DNA of 50,165 nucleotides from NCBI GenBank assembly GCA_002269645.1, contig NIVC01004331.1, positions 18,179 through 68,343 on the forward strand. Reading direction: 5' to 3'. This DNA is from Macrostomum lignano. Its lineage: Eukaryota. Below, piece after piece: positions 10,759 through 46,163 of the stretch (position 1 is the first letter of the stretch; every line of letters begins with the position of its first letter). The position numbers and the translations under genes are program-made. Below the pieces are notes generated by a model that worked only from the letters and a program-made list of their open reading frames with translations, had not been told where the DNA came from and did no database searches.

Positions 10759-11779
10759 CTATTGTCCCCATTAGGTGGCAAGCTGCCAGCACAAAGACAG
10801 AAAAACGAATGACATCAATTATAGATAAATATTCAAGGACAAGTATGCAGATAAAGTGACATTTTCCGTACAATTCCGCATAATTAGCCTTTAAGATTCT
10901 GCTATATATTCATATATATGATAACAATAGTAATAATTCGCTTAGACAATCAGCACAGATATAAAAAATGACAAAAAGGCAGAGAAGGCAATGAATGATA
11001 TGAAGAATGCAGATTGCATGCATCCGGAACTGGGACAGACAGGCAGACAGACATATCACAATTACAAAGAAACACACTTTATATACATTGGGGAATATTA
11101 AAAAATAATGCTATTAGGCTTCCCCAAGAGCGCAGAACAAGTTACACTTTGAAGAAATTTCAATAGCAAACACAAATTTCAAATTTTAAATTATTGCCAA
11201 ACAAAATACAAAAGACACAACTTTGCCGCAACATACTACTGACAGACAGACAGTAGTAATAGTTCAGCCGGCAATAATGAGAAATGTGTAACAGCAGCAA
11301 AACCGGCCGATTACGGGGATAATTTTCTATTGAATTCTTAGCGTAAATCAAATTTTCAATTATTGTTTTTTTATTAATTTTAATTTACGAGCTAAACAAA
11401 TTCCATTTGAAAATAAGCTTGAGTAGTTAGATGCGGTTGCGGCAATAGAAATTAGCACCAGGGTGCCTGCACAACTGATTTGACAAAAGTTACAGTAATA
11501 GACTTATCCAACTACTTAGGAAAACGGGTTCCAGTAGTGTGTTGCGTTTTTTCTGCAATCATAGGTTGACTTTACCAACAAATTGTTGCCATTGCTGAAA
11601 AATAATGAAATCAATAGGGAATAAAAGTACATATAGAAATCTGTTGGATTTCTTAAAAATAACAATTTCAGTACCGAACCTTTGCAACAATGACAAATAC
11701 CTCTGGAATATGCAGCTTCTACATCTGGCATGTCTGCACAAGCCTTTTTCATTGGACTTTATACAATCAGGGAGGGTGA

Positions 11780-12563
11780 CCCAGTAACTGAGGATCTGGG
11801 AGGCTGGCCCAGCAACTGAGGATCTGGGAGGCTGGTCCAGCAACTGAGGATCTGGGAGGCTGGTCCAGCAACTGAGGATCTGGGAGGCTGGCCCAGCAAC
11901 TGAGGATCTGGGAGGCTGGCCCAGCAACTGAGGATCTGGGAGGCTGGTCCAGCAGCTGAGGATCTGGGAGGCTGGCCCAGCAACTGAGGATCTGGGAGGC
12001 TGGCTCAGCAACTGAGGATCTGGGAGGCTGGCCCAACAACTGAGGATCTGGGAGGCTGGCCCAGCAACTGAGGATCTGGGAGGCTGGCCCAGCAACTGGG
12101 GATCTGGGAGGCTGGCCCAGCAACTGAGGATCTGGGAGGCTGGCCCAGCAACTGAGGATCTGGGAGGCTGGTCCAGCAACTGAGGAACTGGGAAGCTAGC
12201 CCAGCAACTGAGGATCTGGGAAGCTAGCCCAGAAACTGAGGAACTGGGAAGCTAGCCCAGCAACTGAGGAACTGGGAGGCTGGCCCAGCAACTGAGGAAC
12301 TAGGAGGCTGGCCCAGCAACTGAGGAACTGGGAGGCTGGCCCAGCAACTGAGGAACTGGGAGGCTGGCCCAGCAACTGAGGAACTGGGAGGCTGGCCCAG
12401 CAACTGAGGAACTGGGAGGCTGGCCCAGCAACTGAGGAACTGGGAGGCTGGCCCAGCAACTGAGGAACTGGGAGGCTGGCCCAGAATCTGAGGTTCTGGG
12501 AGGCTGGCCCAGAAACTGAGGAACTGGGAGGCTGGCCCAGAATCTGAGGAACTGGGAGGCTGG
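11780..12563. repeat. 28-bp minisatellite cagcaactgagga(t/a)ctgggaggctggcc, locus 1
   Basis: About 28 units. The gatct variant occupies 11780-12180 and the gaact variant mostly 12180-12563. Same family as 39940-41731. Confidence 0.97.
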
Positions 12564-13097: not shown

Positions 13098-13598
13098 CAT
13101 TCACACAATCTCACACCTACATTCACACAATATCACATCCACATTCACACAATATCACATCCATATTCACACAATTTCACACCCACATTCACACTCTATC
13201 GCATCCATATTCACGCAATCTCACACCAACATCCACACACTAACACACCAACATTCACACAAATTCACACCCACATTCACACAAATTCACACCCACATTC
13301 ACACAAATTCACACCCACATTCACACAAATTCACACCCACATTCACACAAATTCACATCCATATTCACATCTCACACACATTCACACAATTTACGAGTAA
13401 CACCCACATTTACACACTATCACACCCACATTCACACACTATCACAACCATATTCACATCTCACACACATTCACGAAATTTAACACCCACATTTACACAC
13501 TATCACATCCACATTTACACAATCTCATACACACATTCACACAATATCACACACACATTCACACAGTCTCAAACCTACATTCACACAATCTCACACCT
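13098..13598. repeat. About 22-bp CA-rich minisatellite in Hippo intron 3
   Basis: Units such as cacacccacattcacacaaatt; related to 15062-16044. Confidence 0.9.
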
Positions 13599-13905: not shown

Positions 13906-13970
13906 CTGCGGTTGCAATTGATCGAATTACTATCGGTAATAATATTGATTGTAAATGGCGGAACTGGCAT

Positions 13971-14440
13971 TGTGAATAGCGGAATCTGAACTGTGAATAG
14001 CAGAATCTGAACTGTGAACAGCACAATCTGAACTGTGAACAGCACAATCTGAACTGTGAATAGCAGAATCTGAACTGTGAACAGCAGAATCTGAACTGTG
14101 AATAGCAGAATCTGAACTGTGAACAGCACAATCTGAACTGTGAATAGCAGAATCTGAAGTGTGAACAGCACAATCTGAACTGTGAACAGCACAATCTGAA
14201 CTGTAAACAGCACAATCTGAACTGTGAATAGCAGAATCTGAACTGTGAACAGCACAATCTGAACTGTGAACAGCACAATCTGAACTGTAAACAGCACAAT
14301 CTGAACTGTGAACAGCACAATCTGAACTGTGAATAGCAGAATCTGAACTGTGAACAGCACAATCTGAACTGTGAATAGCAGAATCTGAACTGTGAACAGC
14401 AGAATCTGAACTGTGAATAGCTGAATCTGAACTGTGAACA
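13971..14440. repeat. 21-bp minisatellite gaactgtgaa(c/t)agca(c/g)aatct filling Hippo intron 2
   Basis: About 22 units between the donor at 14459 and the acceptor at 13906. Confidence 0.96.
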
Positions 14441-14459
14441 GAGCAATCTTTTAGCTCAC

Positions 14460-14871
14460 CGTCAGAGTTCTCCGAATCGTCAGCCGGCCGACCGTCCTTT
14501 AATTTTGCGCTGCGCAGCTCCTCTGCCTCGCGCACCATGTCGCGCAGCACAAGATCTGGCGCCCCGGCGGCGGCTTTAATAAACTCGTGCTGCAACAGCC
14601 GCTCGGAACTGGGCCTATCAGCCGGATTCTTAATTAGACACTGGCTAACAAAATCGATAAACTCCTGCGACCATTTGTTGGGATTGCGGAAGCTGGGAGG
14701 CGGCTTAGTTGGGATCATGAACAGGGCGCGCATCGGGTGGATGTCGCCATAGGGAGGCTTGCCGTCGGCCATCTCGATAGCCGTGATGCCCAGAGACCAG
14801 ATGTCCGCCGAATAGTTGTAGCCAATCTCCTGGATCACCTCGGGCGCCATCCAGTAGGGCGTGCCGATCAC
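14460..14871 (-). CDS. STK3/4: Hippo/MST kinase exon 2 of 4 (kinase subdomains VIII-XI)
   Basis: cag|[54 protein letters not shown] ... ENSD G|gtgagc. Confidence 0.97.
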
Positions 14872-15061
14872 CTGAGGTGTTTTGGTTAAGTTATTGACAC
14901 TGCTGAACATCACACGCTCACACAGGGTGTACAGCAGCCCGAATTGCTCATCATTAAGCATGTACTCTCTGTGTCTTGGGGGCTGGTCGTCAAGGGCGAG
15001 AATCGCACGAAAAGCCTTGCACCAATTTTTGCACACGAGCCACAAATTTATGTGGCTGTAG

Positions 15062-16044
15062 TCACACCTATATTCACACAGTATCATACTTACATTCACA
15101 CTATATTACACTTATATTCACACAATCTCATACCTACATTCACACAATCTCACACCTATATTCACACAGTATCACACTTACATTCACACTATATTACACT
15201 TATATTCACACAATCTCATACCTACATTCACACAATCTCACACCTATATTCACACAGTATCACACTTACATTCACACTATATTACACTTATATTCACACA
15301 ATCTCGCGCCTACATTCACACAATCTCATACCTAGGTTCACACTATATGACACATATTCACACAATCTCATACCTACATTCACAAAATCTCACACCTATA
15401 TTCACAGTATAACACCTATATTCACACAGTATCAAACCTATATTCACACAGTATCAAACCTATATTCACACAGTATCACACTTACATTCACACTATATTA
15501 CACTTATATTCACACAATCTCATACCTACATTCACACAATCTCACACCTATATTCACACAGTATCACACTTACATTCACACTATATTACACTTATATTCA
15601 CACACTCTCGCGCCTACATTCACACAATCTCATACCTAGGTTTACACTATATGACACATATTCACACAATCTCATACCTACATTCACACAATCTCACACC
15701 TATATTCACAGTATAACACCTATATTCACACAGTATCAAACCTATATTCACACAGTATCAAACCTATATTCACACAGTATCACACTTACATTCACACTAT
15801 ATTACACCTATATTCACACAATAATCTCATACCTACATTTACAAAATCTCACACCCACATTCACACAATCCCGCACCTACATACACACAAGCTCACACCC
15901 ACATTCACACAATCTCACACCTATATTCACACAATAATCTCATACCTACATTCACACCATCTCACACCCACATTCACACAATCTCACACCCACATTCACA
16001 CAATCTCAAACCTACATTCACACAATCTCACACCTACATTCACA
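15062..16044. repeat. 22-bp CA-rich minisatellite with 88-bp (4x22) higher-order repeat, Hippo intron 1
   Basis: Recurring tetramer cacacctatattcacacagtat / cacacttacattcacactatat / tacacttatattcacacaatct / catacctacattcacacaatct. Confidence 0.92.
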
Positions 16045-16156: not shown

Positions 16157-16224
16157 ACCACCCGAGCTGTTATTATCAACGGTCATCAACAGTAAAAACT
16201 GAAAATAGTTCAGTACAAACTCAC

Positions 16225-16743
16225 AGTATTCCTCTTAGCCATGGTGTCAGTGAGCTGTCCGGCAACACCAAAATCCGCTAATTTAGCCTGGCCCTGCGAA
16301 TTCAACAGTATATTGCCAGCCTTAATATCCCTGTGAATCTTGCGCCTCTGATGCAGGTACTCCAATCCTTTCAGTGTATAAGCCAGTACTGTGGCTATCT
16401 CCATCTCTGACAGGGTTTTACCCCTCAGTCGCATAATATCTGACACTGAGCCAGCGCCGCAGTACTCCATTATAATCCACAGGTCAGCATCTTTGAAATA
16501 GCTGCCGTAGTATTTCACAATGTAGGGCGAATCGCATTGTTGCATAATCGATATCTCTTTAATAATCTCTTGCAGATCTGTGTCAACTGGCACCTTCTTA
16601 ATAGCCAAGGTGTGGCCAGTAGCCATGTGTTCAGCCTTGTACACACTGCCATAGCTGCCTTTGCCCAGCTTGCTCACTATGCTAAACACTTCATCTGGTG
16701 GCTTGGCTAATGAAGCCTCATCCAGCTTCTCAAAGGCTGACAT
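16225..16743 (-). CDS. STK3/4: Hippo/MST kinase exon 1 of 4 (kinase N-lobe to activation loop)
   Basis: MSAFEKLDEASLAKPPDEVF..LGKGSYGSV..AIK..HRDIKAGNILL..DFGVAGQLTDTMAKRNT|gtgagt. In-frame TGA just upstream of the ATG. Confidence 0.97.
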
Positions 16744-17834
16744 TGTTCACTTGTCTCACTGATGCTGGTCAAATATTTATACTGTCTTGACAGGCCTGTG
16801 AACTTAGATAGCTAGACAGCTTAGTCTGACCAGTGTCTGTCTGTTAGTCTTTAATGTTTTGCTACTTTTGTAGCTAATTGCATGAAAAGAATTGGTATTA
16901 ATCAGGTGAGGTATATCTAGTATGTTTCATATACTGAATATACCTCTTAACATAGTAATATAGATCTAAAGTGAAATTTGGTTTTTTAATTACAATTTGG
17001 TTGATATAATTAACAAAAAAGACAATATGCCAAATGGCAGAACTAATTAATCATATATTTTTATATTCTTATATAATATATTTTAATCTGTAAGTTATTT
17101 TTGATAAAAAAAGCTTATTGTTAGAAAAAAAACTGGCATAGTCTATTTAATGAATAATTTCTAATAAATAAGTAGGCAATTAGTAGGTGACTAAGTTTAA
17201 AAATACCAAATTGAATTAATGTTACGTCTTTTTAAATTTTATTGCTAGACTTTTATGATTTATTTAAGCATAATATATTATAAAATGCTATAATTTGCTA
17301 GGCAAGAAATTGAGCCTTGACCCAATTGAAATTCTAAGGCTATTGTATATTCCTATGTGAGTATATGCTTATATAAAGGACTATATTTAAATATACAGAT
17401 ATTTATTTGTATGTTTAAATGTTTTATTCAATTTATTTTTTAATTTTTTAATAAGATTTAACCTTGTTTATCATTAGACATAGCTATATACCCTTCTTTA
17501 TACCTAGGGATTGGTCTTCAAGGCTGTCACTTTAACCAAAATTAATATAATTTTATATAGAACTGAGCCTAGGCCAATAAAACATAGCAAATATAAATAT
17601 AAATATATCAAGACTTGATTTGGCATAAGATTTGAGTCTTAAAATCAATTATAATTAGATTATCTAATTCTAATTACAATATAAATACCATTTTGTACCT
17701 AAACTATAAGGTTAGATATGCCAATAGTCTAAGTGGTCTTTGCAATAAAATATTCTGGTATAAACAAGGCCAAGGGACCCTAATGAACTTGATACATATG
17801 ATAACTGCTAGTATAAATTAAAATGAGTTCTAAG

Positions 17835-18111
17835 CATACATGCACAACCTCCAAAATTCGGTCGGCCGTGCGACTTAGTTTTAACAAAAATGCGACATAG
17901 TTTTTGGCTAAAAATGCGACTTGCATGTAAAAAAACCTAAAGCAAAATTTGGGTAAACGGCAGGAGTAACTATGACTGTCTTATTAAGCCAAAATGCCTC
18001 ATCAGCTACTTAGTACTACTACTTGGGTGTTTCTTGGGTGGGCATTTTTGCGACTTCCTTGGTTGGCTGCCAAATTGGTCAACCGGATCGGCCGACTGTT
18101 GCGCATGTATG
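17835..18111 (+). mobile_element. hAT-type MITE, copy 1 (carries a 28S rDNA fragment)
   Basis: TIRs catacatgcacaac / gttgcgcatgtatg; perfect 8-bp TSD gttctaag at 17827-17834 and 18112-18119. Confidence 0.9.
17951..18014 (+). other. 28S rRNA-derived fragment (H69-H71 region) inside MITE copy 1
   Basis: gggtaaacggcaggagtaactatgactgtcttattaagccaaaatgcctcatcagctacttagt aligns to the conserved eukaryotic gggtaaacggcgggagtaactatgactctcttaaggtagccaaatgcctcgtcatctaattagt. Confidence 0.9.
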
Positions 18112-18386
18112 GTTCTAAGAATAACATGAATTTGCTATGAAACATTCTATTTCTTGCATACACTATGCTCTATAGCAGTCAAGATAGAATTCTTATATTT
18201 AGTATATCCAATACAGGTATACATTTTCTATTACATGCAAAATATATGGCTCTTGGTACATTATGGCAGAAAATTCTAATATTGTATATCGACAAAAATG
18301 TAAGTGAATTGGTGCATTTAGTACATAACAAAAGCCTAGTAGAATTTTTTAGCCCACAGTGGCATATAGCAAAAGCTGGTTAGAAA

Positions 18387-18683
18387 CATACATGCGCAAC
18401 AGTCGGCCGAATTGGCCGATCCAGCCAACTGATTTGGTGGCCAACCAAGATAAGTTGCAAAAATGCCCACCCAAATGATTACCAAAGTAGTACTAAGTAG
18501 ATGACGAGGCATTTTGCCTTGATAAGACAGTCATAGTTACTCCTGCCGTTTACCCAAAGTTGCATTAATTTTGCCTTAGGGTTTCTTTTACATGTAAGTT
18601 GCATTTTTGACCAAAAACTATGTCGCATTTTTGTTAAAACTAAGTTGCATGGCCGACCGAATTTTGGAAGTTGTGCATGTATG
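18387..18683 (-). mobile_element. hAT-type MITE, copy 2, inverted relative to copy 1
   Basis: Same TIRs; a different 8-bp TSD, gttagaaa / attagaaa (7 of 8 match). The body is the reverse complement of copy 1 with indels. Confidence 0.88.
18492..18555 (-). other. 28S rRNA-derived fragment inside MITE copy 2
   Basis: Reverse complement gggtaaacggcaggagtaactatgactgtcttatcaaggcaaaatgcctcgtcatctacttagt. Confidence 0.9.
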
Positions 18684-18735
18684 ATTAGAAAAAATAGCTT
18701 ACCTAAAATTTTATCCACATATCATTATATGCAAT

Positions 18736-19495
18736 CAGTGGTGTGATTGGCAAAGGGCCATTTTTTTCGCGCCTCACAAAAAAATTTGCGCCATTGTTTA
18801 CTAGTTTAAATAACATGCTAACTACATATATGTACATATAGAAAACCCATATTTTTATGGTTTTTGCTTCTTTTTTTCCAGCACTAAGGATCAATCCTTG
18901 CTGTGGCAGTACTTTACCACTCATAAGTTTGGCCTGCACAACTAAAAAGCGAGCAGCAAATGTCCTTGGACAAAAATGGGTGTCAAAACTTCATGGTATT
19001 TGATTTCTAAACTTTTTTGAAGGACACTCTGGGGCAGGCAATGGCTATTCCTAACTTCCTGCTCAACAGCCTTCCATTTCAGCACTTGCTTAGCAATTCT
19101 TTCAGCTTCCTTCAATTTCTTCTGCTGGAGCTTGCATTTCTCCTGTTGAAGCTGTTCCAACTCTTGATCCTTCTCCTTGTTACGAGTCAGCTCCAGTAGC
19201 AGTCATTGGAGCTCTCTTCAGTCTGCTTCCATTTTGACTGGATCTTGTCTTCTTTCATTTTCAGCTGCTGCTCCAGATCCAGATTTGCATGTATTGTACA
19301 CCATAACATAAAGTTTAAATTTGAATAAAGTGTGCGTGAATAGACTAAATGTGATCAGTTCATCAGTAAAAAATGAAAATTTGAAAATTAAAAAATCGCG
19401 CCTCTGCTTGATGAAAATTTGCGCCTGCCCTCAGAAATCGCGTATTAGCGCCTTTTTCGCGCCTGGCGCAAATTCACGCCTCAATCACACCACTG
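18736..19495. mobile_element. Non-autonomous hAT element with a captured coiled-coil coding fragment
   Basis: Perfect 14-bp TIRs cagtggtgtgattg / caatcacaccactg; perfect 8-bp TSD tatgcaat; subterminal gcgcc motifs. Confidence 0.92.
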
Positions 19496-22332: not shown

Positions 22333-22498
22333 GCGCAACCTTGGGATTCACCCGGCCGCCTCTATTGGAAACACACACATGTAAGTCCCTATTGAACAGA
22401 ATAGTAGTCACGTGACTGCTCTCAGCCAGACTTACAGACTTACATGTATGTGTTGCCAATAGAAACGGCCGGGCGATTCCCAAGGTTGCGCATGTATG
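22333..22498. mobile_element. Fold-back MITE sharing the catacatgcgcaac terminus with the 28S-carrying MITE
   Basis: About 55-bp inverted arms (22333-22387 and 22437-22498). The right end is gttgcgcatgtatg; the left end is degraded; the centre is agtcacgtgact. Confidence 0.7.
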
Positions 22499-25998: not shown

Positions 25999-26613
25999 CT
26001 GAAGCGGTGAATAATCACAGGTTCACAGTTCACAGATCTATAATAACTCAATATTAGCTGCTATAAGCGTAGCTCGGGCGTGTGAGTCACCCGGACTGCT
26101 GTGAGCTCCCACAGAGAGAGGGGGAAGGCGAGCAGCGGCAGGACAGAGTGGGAAGCGGGAGCAAACACGGCGCTAAGCAGCCACGCGGCCAACCCCCTCC
26201 TCCCCCCAGAGTTCTGCAACCAGGCCGGCAACGGGCGGGGTGACAAAAATGCAGAGTCTCCGACACACACACAGTCAGGGAGATGGAGAGGAAGAAAAGC
26301 GCGGGGCAAACGGGAGAACACGGAATCAGTGGGGGAAAGATTTCCAATTCCCATCCGTTGCTATTCAGCCGGGCCTACGCACAATTCCCATGCCAGAAAA
26401 GTCAGACATAAAGAGATAAAAAGTTAACTGATGCATATTCTGGGCAGCGGAAGCAGATAGCAGATATGGCATCGCGGCCCGGGGCTCCAATATAGAAAGC
26501 CATTGCGATGGTTAAAAATAGACGCCCCCCCCCGTGAAAATATGGGTTCAACGCTTAAGAAACAATAGCAAGGGGGGACTCCATTTACCCCAGTGCGTGC
26601 TGCAAGTTCCACC

Positions 26614-27091
26614 CTGAGTGCCCTGCATCAGCCACACTGAGTGCCCTGCATCAGCCACACTGAGTGCCCTGCATCAGCCACACTGAGTGCCCTGCATCAG
26701 CCACACTGAGTGCCCTGCATCAGCCACACTGAGTGCCCTGCATCAGCCACACTGAGTGCCCTGCATCAGCCACACTGAGTGCCCTGCATCAGCCACACTG
26801 AGTGCCCTGCATCAGCCACACTGAGTGCCCTGCATCAGCCACACTGAGTGCCCTGCATCAGCCACACTGAGTGCCCTGCATCAGCCACACTGAGTGCCCT
26901 GCATCAGCCACACTGAGTGCCCTGCATCAGCCACACTGAGTGCCCTGCATCAGCCACACTGAGTGCCCTGCATCAGCCACACTGAGTGCCCTGCATCAGC
27001 CACACTGAGTGCCCTGCATCAGCCACACTGAGTGCCCTGCATCAGCCACACTGAGTGCCCTGCATCAGCCACACTGAGTGCCCTGCATCAG
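26614..27091. repeat. 23-bp minisatellite ctgagtgccctgcatcagccaca, locus 1 (intron 10)
   Basis: About 21 essentially identical units. Confidence 0.97.
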
Positions 27092-28585: not shown

Positions 28586-29704
28586 CTGCATCAGCCACAC
28601 TGAATACCCTGCATCAGCCACACTGAGTGCCCTGCATCAGTCACACTGAGTGCCCTGCATCAGCCACACTGAGTGCCCTGCATCAGCCACACTGAATGCC
28701 CTGCATCAGCCACACTGAGTGCCCTGCATCAGTCACACTGAGTGCCCTGCATCAGCCACACTGAGTGCCCTGCATCAGCCACACTGAATGCCCTGCATCA
28801 GCCACACTGAGTGCCCTGCATCAGCCACACTGAATGCCCTGCATCAGCCATACTGAGTGCCCAGCATCAGCCACACTGAGTGCCCTGCATCTGCCACACT
28901 GAGTGCCCTGCATCAGCCACACTGAATGCCCTGCATCAGCCACACTGAGTGCCCTGCATCAGCCACACTGAATGCCCTGCATCAGCCATACTGAGTGCCC
29001 AGCATCAGCCACACTGAGTGCCCTGCATCTGCCACACTGAGTGCCCAGCATCAGCCACACTGAGTGCCCAGCATCAGCCACACTGAATACCCTGCATCAG
29101 CCACACTGAGTGCCCTGCATCAGTCACACTGAGTGCCCTGCATCAGCCACACTGAGTGCCCTGCATCAGCCACACTGAGTGCCCTGCATCAGCCACACTG
29201 AATGCCCTGCATCAGCCACACTGAGTGCCCTGCATCAGCCACACTGAATGCCCTGCATCAGCCACACTGAGTGCCCAGCATCAGCCACACTGAGTGCCCT
29301 GCATCAGCCACACTGAGTGCCCTGCATCAGCCACACTGAGTGCCCTGCATCAGCCACACTGAATGCCCTGCATCAGCCACACTGAATGCCCTGCATCAGC
29401 CACACTGAGTGCCCTGCATCAGCCACACTGAGTGCCCTGCATCAGCCACACTGAGTGCCCTGCATCAGCCACACTGAATGCCCTGCATCAGCCACACTGA
29501 ACGCCCTGCATCAGCCACACTGAGTGCCCTGCATCAGCCACACTGAGTGCCCTGCATCAGCTACACTGAGTGCCCTGCATCAGCCACACTGAATGCCCTG
29601 CATCAGCCACACTGAATGCCCTGCATCAGCCACACTGAACGCCCTGCATCAGCCACACTGAGTGCCCTGCATGAGCCACACTGAGTGCCCTGCATGAGCC
29701 ACAC
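28586..29704. repeat. 23-bp minisatellite, locus 2 (intron 9)
   Basis: About 48 units of the same family as 26614-27091, with point variants. Confidence 0.97.
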
Positions 29705-37377: not shown

Positions 37378-38210
37378 GCGATTCTAAGAAGCTGAGGGCA
37401 AATGTTTTTTATTTAGGGCGATTCTTGGAATCTGAAGGGCGATTCTAAGAATCAAAATTTTAGGTCGATTCTTAAAATCTGAGGCGGTTCTAAGAATCTG
37501 AAGGCGATTCTAAGAATCTGAAGACGCTTCTGAGAATCTGAGGGCGATTCTTAGAATCTGATGGCGATTCTAAGAATCTGATGGCGATTCTAAGAATCTG
37601 ATGGCGATTCTAAGAATCTAAGGGCGATTCTAAGAATCTGATGGCGATTCTAAGAATCTGATGGCGATTCTAAGAATCTGAAGGCGATTCTAAGAATCTG
37701 ATGGCGATTCTAAGAATCTGATGGCGATTCTAAGAATCTAAGGGCGATTCTAAGAATCTGATGGCGATTCTAAGAATCTGAAGACGCTTCTAAGAATCTG
37801 ATGGCGATTCTAAGAATCTGAAGACGCTTCTAAGAATCTGATGGCGATTCTAAGAATCTGAAGACGCTTCTAAGAATCTGATGGCGATTCTAAGAATCTG
37901 ATGGCGATTATAAGAATCTGATGGCGATTCTAAGAATCTGATGGCGATTATAAGAATCTGATGGCGATTATAAGAATCTGATGGCGATTCTAAGAATCTG
38001 ATGGCGCTTCTAAGAATCTGATGGCGATTCTAAGAATCTGAAGGCGATTCTAAGAATCTGATGGCAATTAAGAATCTGAAGGGCAATTCTTAGAAGCAGA
38101 AGGGCGGTTCTTAGAACCTGAGGGCGATTCTCAGAATTTGAGGGCGATTCTTAGAATCTGAGGGCGATTCTTAAAATCTTTGGTCGATTCTCATAATCAG
38201 AGTTCGATTC
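37378..38210. repeat. 20-bp minisatellite ttctaagaatctgatggcga in intron 5
   Basis: About 40 units with degenerate edges; interrupted palindrome gattct-a-agaatc. Confidence 0.95.
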
Positions 38211-39939: not shown

Positions 39940-41731
39940 CTGAGGATATGGGAGGCTCCAGGAACTGAGTATCTAGGAGGGTAGCGATGGCCCAGTAACT
40001 GGGGATCTGGGAGGCTGACCCAGCAACTGAGGATCTGGGAGGCTGGCCCAGCAACTGAGGATCTGGGAGGCTGGCCCAGCAACAGAGGATCTGGGAGGCT
40101 GGCCCAGCAACTGAGGATCTGGGAGGCTGGCCCAGCAACTGAGGATCTGGGAGGCTGGCCCAGCAACTGGGGATCTGGGAGGCTGGCCCAGCAACTGGGG
40201 ATCTGGGAGGCTGGCCCAGCAACTGGGGATCTGGGAGGCTGGCCCAGCAACTGAGGATCTGGGAGGCTGGCCCAGCAACTGAGGATCTGGGAGGCTGGCT
40301 CAGCAACTGAGGATCTGGGAGGCTGGCCCAGCAACTGAGGATCTGGGAGGCTGGCCCAGCAACTGAGGATCTGGGAGGCTGGCTCAGCAACTGAGGATCT
40401 GGGAGGCTGGCCCAGCAACTGGGTATCTGGGAGGCTGGCCCAGCAACTGAGGATCTGGGAGGCTGGCCCAGCAACTGAGGATCTGGGAGGCTGGCTCAGC
40501 AACTGAGGATCTGGGAGGCTGGCCCAGCAACTGGGTATCTGGGAGGCTGGCCCAGCAACTGAGGATCTGGGAGGCTGGCCCAGCAACTGAGGATCTGGGA
40601 GGCTGGCCCAGCAACTGAGGATCTGGGAGGCTGGCCCAGCAACTGAGGATCTGGGAGGCTGGCCCAGCAACTGGGGATCTAGGAGGCTGGCCCGGCAACT
40701 AAGGATCTGGAAGGCTGGCCCAGCAACTGAGGATCTGGGAGGCTGGCCCAGCAACTGAGGATCTGGAAGGCTGGCCCAGCAACTGAGGATCTGGGAGGCT
40801 GGCCCAGCAACTGAGGATCTGGGAGGCTGGCCCAGCAACTGGGGATCTGGGAGGCTGGCCCAGCAACTGGGGATCTGGGAGGCTGGCCCAGCAACTGAGA
40901 ATCTGGGAGGCTGGCCCAGCAACTGAGGATCTGGGAGGCTGGCCCAGCAACTGAGGATCTGGGAGGCTGGCCCAGCAACTGGGGATCTGGGAGGCTGGCC
41001 CGGCAACTGAGAATCTGGGAGGCTGGCCCAGCAACTGAGGATCTGGGAGGCTGGCCCAGCAACTGAGGATCTGGGAGGCTGGCCCAGCAACTGGGGATCT
41101 GGGAGGCTGGCCCAGCAACTGGGGATCTAGGAGGCTGGCCCGGCAACTGAGGATCTGGGAGGCTGGCCCAGCAACTGAGGATCTGGAAGGCTGGCCCAGC
41201 AACTGAGGATCTGGGAGGCTGGCCCAGCAACTGAGGATCTGGGAGGCTGGCCCAGCAACTGGGGATCTGGGAGGCTGGCCCAGCAACTGGGGATCTGGGA
41301 GGCTGGCCCAGCAACTGAGGATCTAGGAGGCTGGCCCAGCAACTAAGGATCTGGGAGGCTGGCCCAGCAACTGAGGATCTGGGAGGCTGGCCCAGCAACT
41401 GGGGATCTGGGAGGCTGGCCCAGCAACTGAGGATCTAGGAGGCTGGCCCGGCAACTGAGGATCTGGAAGGCTGGCCCAGCAACTGAGGATCTGGGAGGCT
41501 GGCCCAGCAACTGAGAATCTGGGAGGCTGGCCCAGCAACTGAGGATCTGGGAGGCTGGCCCAGCAACTGGGGATCTGGGAGGCTGGCCCAGCAACTGAGG
41601 ATCTGGGAGGCTGGCGGTAGCCCAGCAACTGAGGATCTGGGAGGCTGGCGGTAGCCCAGCAACTGAGGATCTGGGAGGCTGGCGGTAGCCCAGCAACTGA
41701 GGATCTGGGAGGCTTGAGCCCAGCTACTGGG
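39940..41731. repeat. 28-bp minisatellite, locus 2 (TMEM131 intron 4)
   Basis: About 63 units of cagcaactgaggatctgggaggctggcc. Confidence 0.97.
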
Positions 41732-44922: not shown

Positions 44923-46163
44923 ATGGATGCAAACAAAACTAATAGCATCGCACATGATGATGAAAGAGATTTGGACTGTTTTGAAGCAACCGTGGGCGAC
45001 AAAGCAATCAAGATTGACAAGCGCGACGATGATATCATAATAAACAACGAGTGCAAGCGAATCATGCGGAATCTCTGCAGCACACCTGTCGGTCGAGCAA
45101 ACTTCGAATCCGAAGTGGAAGTGACACAGCCATCATTTCTGACACCAGAAGATCGCATTCTATTCTTTAAAACAAAAATGTTTTACTTGCTGCAGGAGCG
45201 CCACTGCTTTCTTCAACAGAGCAACCGAGCAAAACAATGCGGAGAGAAGTTAAATAGTAAAAGAAAGAAAACAATATCAGAGGCCTATCCAGTTTTTTGT
45301 CGCCGTTTGGTGAGTCCGTCGTAGATCAGGACTTGCCGCCAAGCAACAGTCCGGTTAGGAAGCGGTACCGCAGCGTAGTTGGCTCAGAGTTGCTGAAACC
45401 GGACGGCGGTAAAAGGACTGCTTTGTTGACCAAGATTCCTTCAACTAACAAGATGCAAGCCAGCTCACAGGTCCATAAAACGGGGATGAGCAGGTTTCTA
45501 GAAAACATCCGCAAAGCTGATCTGTCGGCAATGCGCATGCTGGAAGAGAAAATCCTCAAGACAATGGAAGGAGCCGGCTATGCCTCACTTTTCAAAGATG
45601 ATGTCAAGAAAATTGAAGTGCTCCTTGACATCTTTGCCGATTATAATCTTCTAATGCAGGATGGAAAGGACGAGGAGAGCATGCTAAACAATTTGGCCAA
45701 TCACGTTCGAACTCGTATTAAATACTTTGACAAGCTGCAGCAGTTCTACGATAATCCGATTAACCGCGACGATCATACGGCGCACGTGTTCAGCATACCT
45801 AACATGGATGTGGCCGACGTGCACGAAGAGCTGGTCAACCTCAGGCCGAAGCGGATGCATCAGCTAGACGAGAAGAAAATCAAGAATCTGTACGCATTGT
45901 TCAAGGACGACTATAGTACAGCCAAAACCACCCTAATTGCCGACGGAACTCAGCCGGTTGTGCTCAACAGAAAAAAGATGGACCGAGTCAAGCGATACGT
46001 CGACGAGTGCTTAGATTGGAAAGGCGCTACACTGGTGCCGTACGTTCCGGAGATGAACTTCTTCGGCCTGACGATATTATGGAAACGGGAACAGGAGTCT
46101 GTGAAATCCACCGACACCGATATTGATGCTTTGAAACCTAACCTGGAGAAAGACGGGGACTAA
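44923..46163 (+). CDS. Intronless hypothetical protein (about 413 aa) split by an apparent 1-bp deletion at T6 45293-45298
   Basis: ORFs 44923-45324 and 45297-46163 join if T6 is T7 (1242 nt = 414 codons). Globular, non-repetitive composition; no family recognised. Confidence 0.6.

What the first reader, a model, noticed from the sequence alone, without database searches (positions are those of the whole stretch)
17835..18683. hAT MITE carrying the 28S rRNA H69-H71 segment, the R2/I-PpoI target region, with the cut site mutated
Seen: two independent insertions (different 8-bp TSDs, 14-bp TIRs) each contain a 64-bp stretch matching eukaryotic 28S rRNA gggtaaacggcgggagtaactatgactctcttaaggtagccaaatgcctcgtcatctaattagt. 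The flanks are nearly intact, but the central ttaaggtagcc reads ttattaagcca or ttatcaaggca. Known: this is helix 69-71 and the site used by R2 retrotransposons, the I-PpoI homing endonuclease and, nearby, other rDNA-specific elements. The shared changes in H69 are not compensatory, so rRNA folding is not preserved. Inference: a DNA transposon family spreading an uncleavable copy of the most contested rDNA site. It could be a decoy for R2-like proteins, a source of rRNA-matching small RNAs, a nucleolar tether, or a neutral capture. I know of no described hAT MITE of this kind.
Basis: partly seen in the sequence, partly recalled or inferred. Interest (0 to 1): 0.85.

Follow-up and report, generated by a model that had tools for sequence, protein, structure and literature searches.

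The report
Flatworm MITE carrying a decayed 28S fragment
Two copies of a small non-coding DNA transposon in the flatworm Macrostomum lignano each carry a decayed 64-66 bp piece of the 28S rRNA gene spanning the R2/I-PpoI site; this is most likely a passively captured scrap of rDNA, and no function is shown.

Summary
Copy 1 is 17835-18111 (277 bp, perfect TSD GTTCTAAG). Copy 2 is 18387-18683 (297 bp, inverted, TSD GTTAGAAA/ATTAGAAA). Both end in the 14-bp inverted repeat CATACATGCRCAAC. Each carries a central 64-66 nt piece matching eukaryotic 28S H69-H71 (86% and 85% identity, E=6e-15 and 3e-13). Six of the nine differences shared by both copies fall in one 8-nt window on the R2 nick and I-PpoI cut site (P~0.001). 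Two of six H69 pairs are broken by one-sided changes.

The host is Macrostomum lignano. The copies lie in AT-rich DNA 1.1-1.9 kb upstream of the Hippo/STK3 kinase gene.

The 28S piece is not more conserved between copies than the arms (93.9% against 92.2% and 82.8%; Fisher p=0.25). It fails Rfam's threshold. Homology stops at both edges.

Best reading: a MITE whose filler DNA came from rDNA, possibly from a unit already scarred at the R2 site.

The hAT label rests only on the TSDs, and the termini do not fit the hAT consensus. Decoy or small-RNA roles are untested because the host genome could not be reached.

This is a new example of a known kind (TEs with rDNA-derived modules). Interest is modest.

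The parts
17827..17834 (.). Target-site duplication of copy 1, left (GTTCTAAG)
   Evidence: Identical 8-mer at 18112-18119.
17835..18111 (+). MITE copy 1, 277 bp
   Evidence: TIRs at 17835-17848 and 18098-18111. No ORF has database relatives.
17951..18016 (+). 28S rRNA-derived piece of copy 1 (H69-H71; -36 to +30 around the R2 nick)
   Evidence: 52/64 identical to the consensus without gaps; BLASTN 85%, E=2.8e-13.
18112..18119 (.). Target-site duplication of copy 1, right (GTTCTAAG)
18379..18386 (.). Target-site duplication of copy 2 (GTTAGAAA)
   Evidence: Matches 18684-18691 at 7 of 8 positions.
18387..18683 (-). MITE copy 2, 297 bp, inverted relative to copy 1
   Evidence: TIRs at 18387-18400 and 18670-18683.
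18490..18555 (-). 28S rRNA-derived piece of copy 2
   Evidence: 55/64 identical; E=6e-15. cmscan LSU_rRNA_eukarya 19.4 bits.
18684..18691 (.). Target-site duplication of copy 2 (ATTAGAAA)
17869..18056 (+). Subterminal direct repeats TGCRACWT in copy 1 (17869, 17891, 17915, 18049). Copy 2 has five on the - strand (18452, 18557, 18596, 18620, 18642).
   Evidence: Nine of 13 window-wide matches lie in the two copies, all in element orientation. They are presumed transposase-binding repeats (inference).
22333..22498 (.). Remnant of a related MITE. It has the same right terminus (GTTGCGCATGTATG) and a long internal palindrome, lacks the 7 terminal nt on the left, and has no 28S piece.

Best explanation
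The finding is a non-autonomous terminal-inverted-repeat DNA transposon (MITE, about 280-300 bp) of the flatworm Macrostomum lignano.

How it moves:
- A transposase encoded elsewhere is presumed to recognise the CATACATGCRCAAC termini and the TGCRACWT subterminal repeats.
- Insertion produces 8-bp duplications at nTTCTAAn-like targets.

The 28S piece:
- Between the two transposon arms lies a 64-66 nt piece copied from the 28S rRNA gene (H69-H71).
- It was most likely picked up as filler DNA when a longer element was internally deleted during repair of an excision break (abortive gap repair with template switching). rDNA is an abundant donor for such repair.
- The piece is now a decaying passenger. 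It cannot fold as rRNA and is not a usable R2 or I-PpoI site.
- The dense 8-nt block of changes exactly at the R2 nick is best explained as one complex mutational event. It may be a repair scar already present in the donor rDNA unit, or one made early in the family's history.

The two copies here are separate insertions, 275 bp apart and in opposite orientation, upstream of the Hippo/STK3 gene.

What is shown: the structure, the TSDs, the 28S origin, the clustering of changes and the lack of extra conservation.
What is inferred: the capture mechanism, the origin of the scar and the identity of the transposase.
For: - TIRs and TSDs, with flanks unrelated beyond the TSD.
- A third element shares the same terminus but has a different interior.
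- Nine of 13 TGCRACWT motifs in the window lie inside the copies, on both sides of the 28S piece.
- The 28S match is significant and sharply bounded.
- It falls below Rfam's gathering score and two H69 pairs are broken.
- Copy-to-copy identity is 93.9% in the 28S piece, 92.2% in the left arm and 82.8% in the right arm; Fisher p=0.25.
- Outside the central block, the piece differs from 28S at 3 of 56 sites. This is in the same range as the divergence between the copies.
- hAT-type Ds-like elements carry filler DNA that is sometimes captured from genes, and this is attributed to errors in break repair (PMC3260210).
- TEs with rDNA-derived modules are documented: Pokey IGS and ITS2 repeats, SINE28 and 5S SINEs/TRIMs (PMC10946416; PMC3849761).
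Against: - Only two copies could be examined, so a test for selection has almost no power.
- The piece spans -36 to +30 around the R2 nick, close to the R2Bm footprint (-38 to +21).
- It keeps every specified base of the R2Bm upstream motif while the cleavage motif is destroyed with no net length change. A random capture would not be expected to do this.
- The scar origin is conjecture. No micro-inversion or simple footprint reproduces the block.
- The host's own 28S, its rDNA variants and its R2 content were not available.
Confidence: 0.7

Rival explanations
1. The 28S piece is a functional module. It could act as a non-cleavable decoy that binds R2-type proteins through the intact upstream motif. 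Alternatively, it could be a source of 28S- or R2-junction-matching small RNAs, helped by inverted pairs such as this one that fold into long hairpins.
For: - The R2Bm upstream motif is GTAAACGGCGGGA and the MITE reads GTAAACGGCAGGA. The single change is at -25, an 'N' position of the selected consensus AWWWGCNNNA.
- The spacing to the former nick is unchanged, while the cleavage motif TTAAGG|T reads TTATTAA or TTATCAA.
- The changes cluster at the site (P=0.0012).
- The piece corresponds roughly to the R2 footprint.
- The inverted pair folds as a hairpin of about 290 bp (MFE -477 kcal/mol, z=-40).
- R2 occurs in Platyhelminthes (PMC5035012).
Against: - The piece is not significantly more conserved than the arms (p=0.25).
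- Copy 1 has gained further changes inside the piece.
- The recognition rules come from a silkworm R2, not a flatworm one.
- It is unknown whether M. lignano has a site-specific R2. Some flatworm R2 lineages are not site-specific.
- Copy number is unknown.
- There are no expression or small-RNA data.
Confidence: 0.07
2. The family arose inside or next to rDNA. An ancestral element could have lived at the 28S insertion hot spot, or two termini could have flanked an rDNA orphon. The 28S piece would then be a remnant of that birthplace, as with Pokey/mPok, rather than filler from a distant donor.
For: - Pokey and its MITEs live at a TTAA site in the 28S gene and carry rDNA-derived internal sequence. 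That this TTAA lies in the same stretch as the R2 site is my own recollection, not something the paper text confirmed.
- The piece is centred on the insertion hot spot.
- The central block can be aligned as small indels around TTA/AAGG.
Against: - The 28S sequence is internal, not flanking.
- The TSDs here are AT-rich nTTCTAAn, not 28S sequence.
- The net length across the site is unchanged, unlike an 8-bp hAT footprint.
- No rDNA lies nearby in the window.
Confidence: 0.12
3. The two copies are one local inverted duplication, not two insertions.
For: - They are adjacent and inverted.
- Similarity runs 7 nt past each terminus, since both TSDs read TTCTAA.
Against: - Beyond the 8-bp TSDs the flanks are unrelated.
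- Each copy has its own direct TSD pair.
- The copies differ by 6-17% in substitutions depending on the segment, plus several indels.
Confidence: 0.03
4. The resemblance to 28S is chance or low-complexity similarity.
For: The match is below Rfam's gathering threshold, and it is not listed at E<=1 in a whole-window scan.
Against: - BLASTN gives E=6e-15 and 2.8e-13.
- The 27-mer with one mismatch is found twice against 0 in 100 shuffles.
- The two collinear blocks keep the exact 28S spacing.
Confidence: 0.01

Closest known systems
Ds-like (Ds-l4) and other hAT-type non-autonomous elements carrying filler or captured host DNA (maize; PMC3260210)
   Same: Short TIRs, 8-bp TSDs and subterminal repeats. 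The interior is unrelated to any transposase and consists of filler copied from elsewhere in the genome.
   Different: The host is an animal. The termini do not fit the hAT consensus and no partner transposase is known. The filler is a piece of the rRNA gene rather than of a protein-coding gene.
Pokey / mPok piggyBac elements of Daphnia (PMC3849761)
   Same: A DNA transposon family, with MITE derivatives, that carries rDNA-derived internal sequence.
   Different: Pokey inserts at TTAA, including one specific 28S site. Its rDNA-derived parts are IGS and ITS2 repeats that evolve in concert with rDNA. Here the TSDs are 8 bp and AT-rich, the piece comes from the 28S core, and it is decaying.
SINE28, the mammalian 28S-derived SINE (PMC4994717, listed in PMC10946416 Table 2)
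   Same: A dispersed repeat family containing a 28S rRNA-derived segment.
   Different: SINE28 is a retroposon. This element has TIRs and TSDs typical of cut-and-paste transposition.
R2 target site in 28S rDNA (PMC10499050) and the I-PpoI site CTCTCTTAAGGTAGC
   Same: The piece covers -36 to +30 of the R2 target and retains the upstream motif.
   Different: The cleavage motif TTAAGG|T and 6-7 of the 15 I-PpoI positions are changed, so it is not a usable target.

Membership tests
MITE (non-autonomous TIR DNA transposon) | Terminal inverted repeats | tested here: met
   A 14-bp TIR with 13/14 complementarity in both copies. The 14-mer occurs 5 times against 0.97 expected.
MITE (non-autonomous TIR DNA transposon) | Target-site duplications flanking each copy, with otherwise unrelated flanks | tested here: met
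   GTTCTAAG matches at 8/8 and GTTAGAAA/ATTAGAAA at 7/8. The flanks are unrelated.
MITE (non-autonomous TIR DNA transposon) | Small size and no coding capacity | tested here: met
   The copies are 277 and 297 bp. The longest ORF is 79 aa, and its translations found nothing among 5.8 billion proteins.
MITE (non-autonomous TIR DNA transposon) | Multi-copy family in the genome | tested here: inconclusive
   The 50-kb window holds two copies plus one related remnant. The host genome could not be searched.
hAT superfamily | 8-bp TSD | tested here: met
   Both copies. This is the conventional criterion for hAT MITEs (PMC7385995), but it is shared with P, Novosib and others.
hAT superfamily | Target pattern nTnnnnAn (from general knowledge of hAT elements) | tested here: met
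   GTTCTAAG and TTTCTAAC/T both have T at position 2 and A at position 7. The sample is only two sites.
hAT superfamily | Terminal consensus YARNG (from general knowledge) | tested here: not met
   The termini read CATAC. Position 3 is T, not a purine, and position 5 is C, not G.
hAT superfamily | Autonomous partner encoding a hAT transposase with the same termini | not testable with these tools
   The window has no transposase ORF.
Functional 28S rRNA gene or intact rRNA domain | Reaches the Rfam LSU_rRNA_eukarya gathering score and keeps H69 pairing | tested here: not met
   The score is 19.4 bits against 50. Two of six H69 pairs are broken by one-sided changes.
R2 target site (R2Bm rules, PMC10499050) | Upstream motif A(-31)WWWGCNNNA(-22) at the correct distance | tested here: met
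   The MITE reads AACGGCAGGA against the 28S AACGGCGGGA. It matches the specified positions exactly as the wild-type 28S does. The only change is at -25, an N position. Spacing is unchanged.
R2 target site (R2Bm rules, PMC10499050) | Cleavage motif TTAAGG|T | tested here: not met
   It reads TTATTAA in copy 1 and TTATCAA in copy 2.
I-PpoI site | CTCTCTTAAGGTAGC | tested here: not met
   It reads CTGTCTTATTAAGCC in copy 1 and CTGTCTTATCAAGGC in copy 2.
TEs with rDNA-derived modules (PMC10946416, Table 2) | A mobile element whose internal sequence is demonstrably derived from rDNA | tested here: met

The most novel reading that the evidence does not exclude
The family is maintained because its 28S piece mimics the R2 landing pad with the cleavage motif knocked out. 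It could then act as a dispersed binding decoy for R2-type proteins. When inverted pairs are transcribed, it could instead be a source of small RNAs against the 28S/R2 junction region. That would be a DNA transposon interfering with an rDNA-specific retrotransposon.
Probability: 0.06. Interest if true: 0.8.

Novelty: new member of a known kind. Interest (0 to 1): 0.3.

Why it matters
If it is only a passive capture, it adds one more documented case of rDNA sequence dispersed by a transposon, here a cut-and-paste MITE carrying 28S core sequence. The 2024 review lists only 5S promoters, SINE28 and the Pokey IGS repeats. It is also a practical caution, because such copies can seed spurious rRNA hits, off-target sites for rDNA-directed tools and rRNA-like small RNAs. 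The scar-like block at the R2 nick would be worth a look in M. lignano rDNA variants, as a possible trace of failed R2 integration. Only if the 28S piece proved to be under constraint would it bear on conflict between mobile elements at the rDNA hot spot.

Tried and rejected
Searches for more copies that found nothing:
- Exact scans of JGI metagenome contigs with a MITE-specific 27-mer from the 28S piece and with the left terminus.
- A protein search with the mostly open reading frame of both copies, in the hope of picking up ORFs called in other copies.
- Look-ups of the two M. lignano STK3 proteins, aimed at reaching host contigs or the homeologous locus for an empty-site test. Neither is on record.

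Host identification:
- The first attempt, with a single exon, gave at most 89% identity, because listed hits appear limited to about 1.75 times the query length.
- A two-exon query then gave 100% identity to M. lignano.

Tests on the 28S piece:
- Extension of the homology up- or downstream, as the cmscan alignment to model positions 2200-2310 suggested. Local alignments are no better than shuffles. The 10 extra bases in copy 2 are another TGCAACTT subterminal repeat.
- Micro-inversion or reversal as the cause of the central block. The best case removes only 2 of 9 mismatches.
- Other rRNA-like fragments in the window. None were found.

Other checks:
- A transposase in the window. None was found.
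- Literature. No paper in the library holds both 'Macrostomum' and 'miniature inverted-repeat'.

Full report
**What is there**

Reading 17400-19200 and the repeat search show two copies of one short element in opposite orientation.
- Copy 1 is 17835-18111 (277 bp, + strand). Copy 2 is 18387-18683 (297 bp, - strand). They are 275 bp apart.
- Each ends in CATACATGCACAAC on one side and GTTGCGCATGTATG on the other, a 14-bp inverted repeat with one A/G mismatch.
- This 14-mer occurs five times in the 50-kb window against 0.97 expected. Four occurrences are the ends of the two copies.
- The fifth is the right end of a related remnant at 22333-22498. That remnant has a different, palindromic interior and has lost 7 terminal bases on its left side.
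- Copy 1 is flanked by a perfect 8-bp direct repeat, GTTCTAAG. Copy 2 is flanked by GTTAGAAA and ATTAGAAA (7/8).
- Beyond these 8 bp the flanks are unrelated, so these are two insertions and not a local duplication.
- In the element's orientation both targets read nTTCTAAn, which points to a target preference.
- Nine of the window's 13 matches to TGCRACWT lie inside the two copies. All are in element orientation and they lie on both sides of the centre. They look like subterminal transposase-binding repeats.
- The element has no coding capacity. Translations of its most open frame found nothing in the protein collection.

**The 28S piece**

- At the centre of each copy (17951-18016 on +, 18490-18555 on -) is a 64-66 nt stretch matching eukaryotic LSU rRNA.
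- The 27-mer GGGTAAACGGCGGGAGTAACTATGACT is present twice with one mismatch, against none in 100 shuffles.
- BLASTN of the Rfam LSU consensus against the window gives 64 nt at 86% (E=6e-15) and 85% (E=2.8e-13).
- cmscan assigns copy 2 to LSU_rRNA_eukarya at 19.4 bits, E=0.038. This is well below the gathering score of 50.
- The cmscan alignment reaches back to model position 2200. The extra stretch is no better than shuffled sequence, and the same holds downstream.
- The piece therefore runs only from GGGTAAACGG to TTAGTAC.

**The changed site**

- Against the consensus, nine mismatches are shared by both copies. Six of them lie in one 8-nt window (AGGTAGCC becomes TYAAGSCA). The permutation P is 0.0012.
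- That window straddles the R2 nick (TTAAGG|T; PMC10499050) and the I-PpoI cut within CTCTCTTAAGGTAGC.
- Net length across the site is unchanged.
- No small inversion accounts for the block. Gapped alignments need three small indels.
- Outside this block the piece differs from 28S at 3 of 56 shared positions.
- The two changes in H69 (G->A and C->G) hit different base pairs and break two of six.
- By the rules worked out for silkworm R2, the upstream motif survives. GTAAACGGCGGGA reads GTAAACGGCAGGA, and the change is at -25, an unconstrained position. The cleavage motif is gone.
- The piece spans -36 to +30 around the nick, which is close to the protein's footprint of -38 to +21. I record this as an unexplained coincidence.

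**Host and context**

- A two-exon reconstruction of the kinase encoded at 16210-16743 and about 14570-15099 (- strand) is 100% identical to Macrostomum lignano STK3/Hippo proteins (taxonomy).
- The elements lie in AT-rich DNA 1.1-1.9 kb upstream of that gene's start codon.
- A TMEM131-like gene lies at about 27-37 kb.
- The window is full of 15-28 bp minisatellites. This fits the published description of the genome: more than half is repetitive, and 15% is simple and tandem repeats (PMC5730564).
- If transcribed together, the inverted pair would fold into a hairpin of about 290 bp (MFE -477 kcal/mol, z=-40). A single copy pairs little beyond its termini (z=-2.3).

**Is the 28S piece under constraint?**

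- Between the two copies, identity is 92.2% in the left arm, 93.9% in the 28S piece and 82.8% in the right arm.
- The difference between the piece and the arms is not significant (Fisher p=0.25).
- Using 28S as outgroup, copy 1 has acquired at least three private substitutions inside the piece.
- With two copies this test is weak, and it gives no sign of constraint.

**Interpretation**

The most economical reading is a MITE whose interior includes filler DNA copied from rDNA.
- Ds-like elements are the textbook parallel. They share only termini and subterminal repeats with Ac and carry filler that is sometimes traceable to genes. The capture is attributed to errors in repairing excision breaks (PMC3260210).
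- TEs with rDNA-derived modules are a recognised category. Examples are 5S promoters in SINEs and TRIMs, 28S in mammalian SINE28, and IGS and ITS2 repeats in Pokey and its MITEs (PMC10946416; PMC3849761).
- The review's authors themselves judge that most such modules bring no benefit to the TE.
- A cut-and-paste MITE with 28S core sequence is not in that table. No paper in the library links Macrostomum with MITEs.
- I therefore treat this as a new member of a known kind.
- The clustered block at the R2 nick needs a special event. I favour a single complex repair scar, perhaps in a donor rDNA unit damaged at this much-used site. R2 is known in flatworms (PMC5035012). This step is inference only.

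**Superfamily**

- The hAT label rests on the 8-bp TSDs and their nTnnnnAn pattern.
- The termini (CATAC...) do not fit the hAT consensus, which I recall from general knowledge.
- No transposase could be examined.
- I keep the label as 'hAT-like, tentative'.

**Limits**

- The host genome could not be searched with the available collections.
- Copy number, family-wide conservation, the autonomous partner, the host's own 28S and R2 content, and small-RNA output all remain open.
- The decoy or small-RNA reading is not excluded. I give it about 6%.

Noticed in passing
window 17827-18691: The two inverted MITE copies, with their 275-bp spacer, would form a near-perfect hairpin of about 290 bp if transcribed as one RNA (MFE -477 kcal/mol, z=-40). 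The pair sits 1.1-1.9 kb upstream of the Hippo/STK3 start codon and is a candidate hairpin-RNA locus.
   Followed up: partly
window 22333-22498: A second MITE family shares the terminus GTTGCGCATGTATG but has a 55-bp-arm palindromic interior. It has no 28S piece and has lost 7 terminal nt on the left. The same transposase probably mobilised at least two families.
   Followed up: partly
window 13098-13597 and 15062-16044; 26609-27091 and 28586-29704; 11766-12563 and 39988-41729: The same minisatellite unit recurs at paired sites that bracket exons of the kinase and TMEM131-like genes, or lie 28 kb apart (units of 22, 23 and 28 bp). In all, 29 TRF rows cover a large share of the window.
   Followed up: no
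window 13948-14449: A 21/42-bp minisatellite continues in frame from the second kinase exon as ...[14 protein letters not shown]... repeats. I did not check whether it is coding or intronic.
   Followed up: no
window 37466-38191: A 20-bp partly palindromic minisatellite (CGATTCTAAGAATCTGATGG) gives weak matches on both strands to the mir-3524 model (24-27 bits against a gathering score of 99). These are almost certainly chance.
   Followed up: no
window 45297-46163: A 288-aa ORF in AT-rich DNA has no Pfam match. Its nature is unknown.
   Followed up: partly
method: the search for homologous proteins listed no hit longer than about 1.75 times the query. A single-exon query therefore missed the host's full-length protein, and a longer query found it at 100% identity.
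   Followed up: yes
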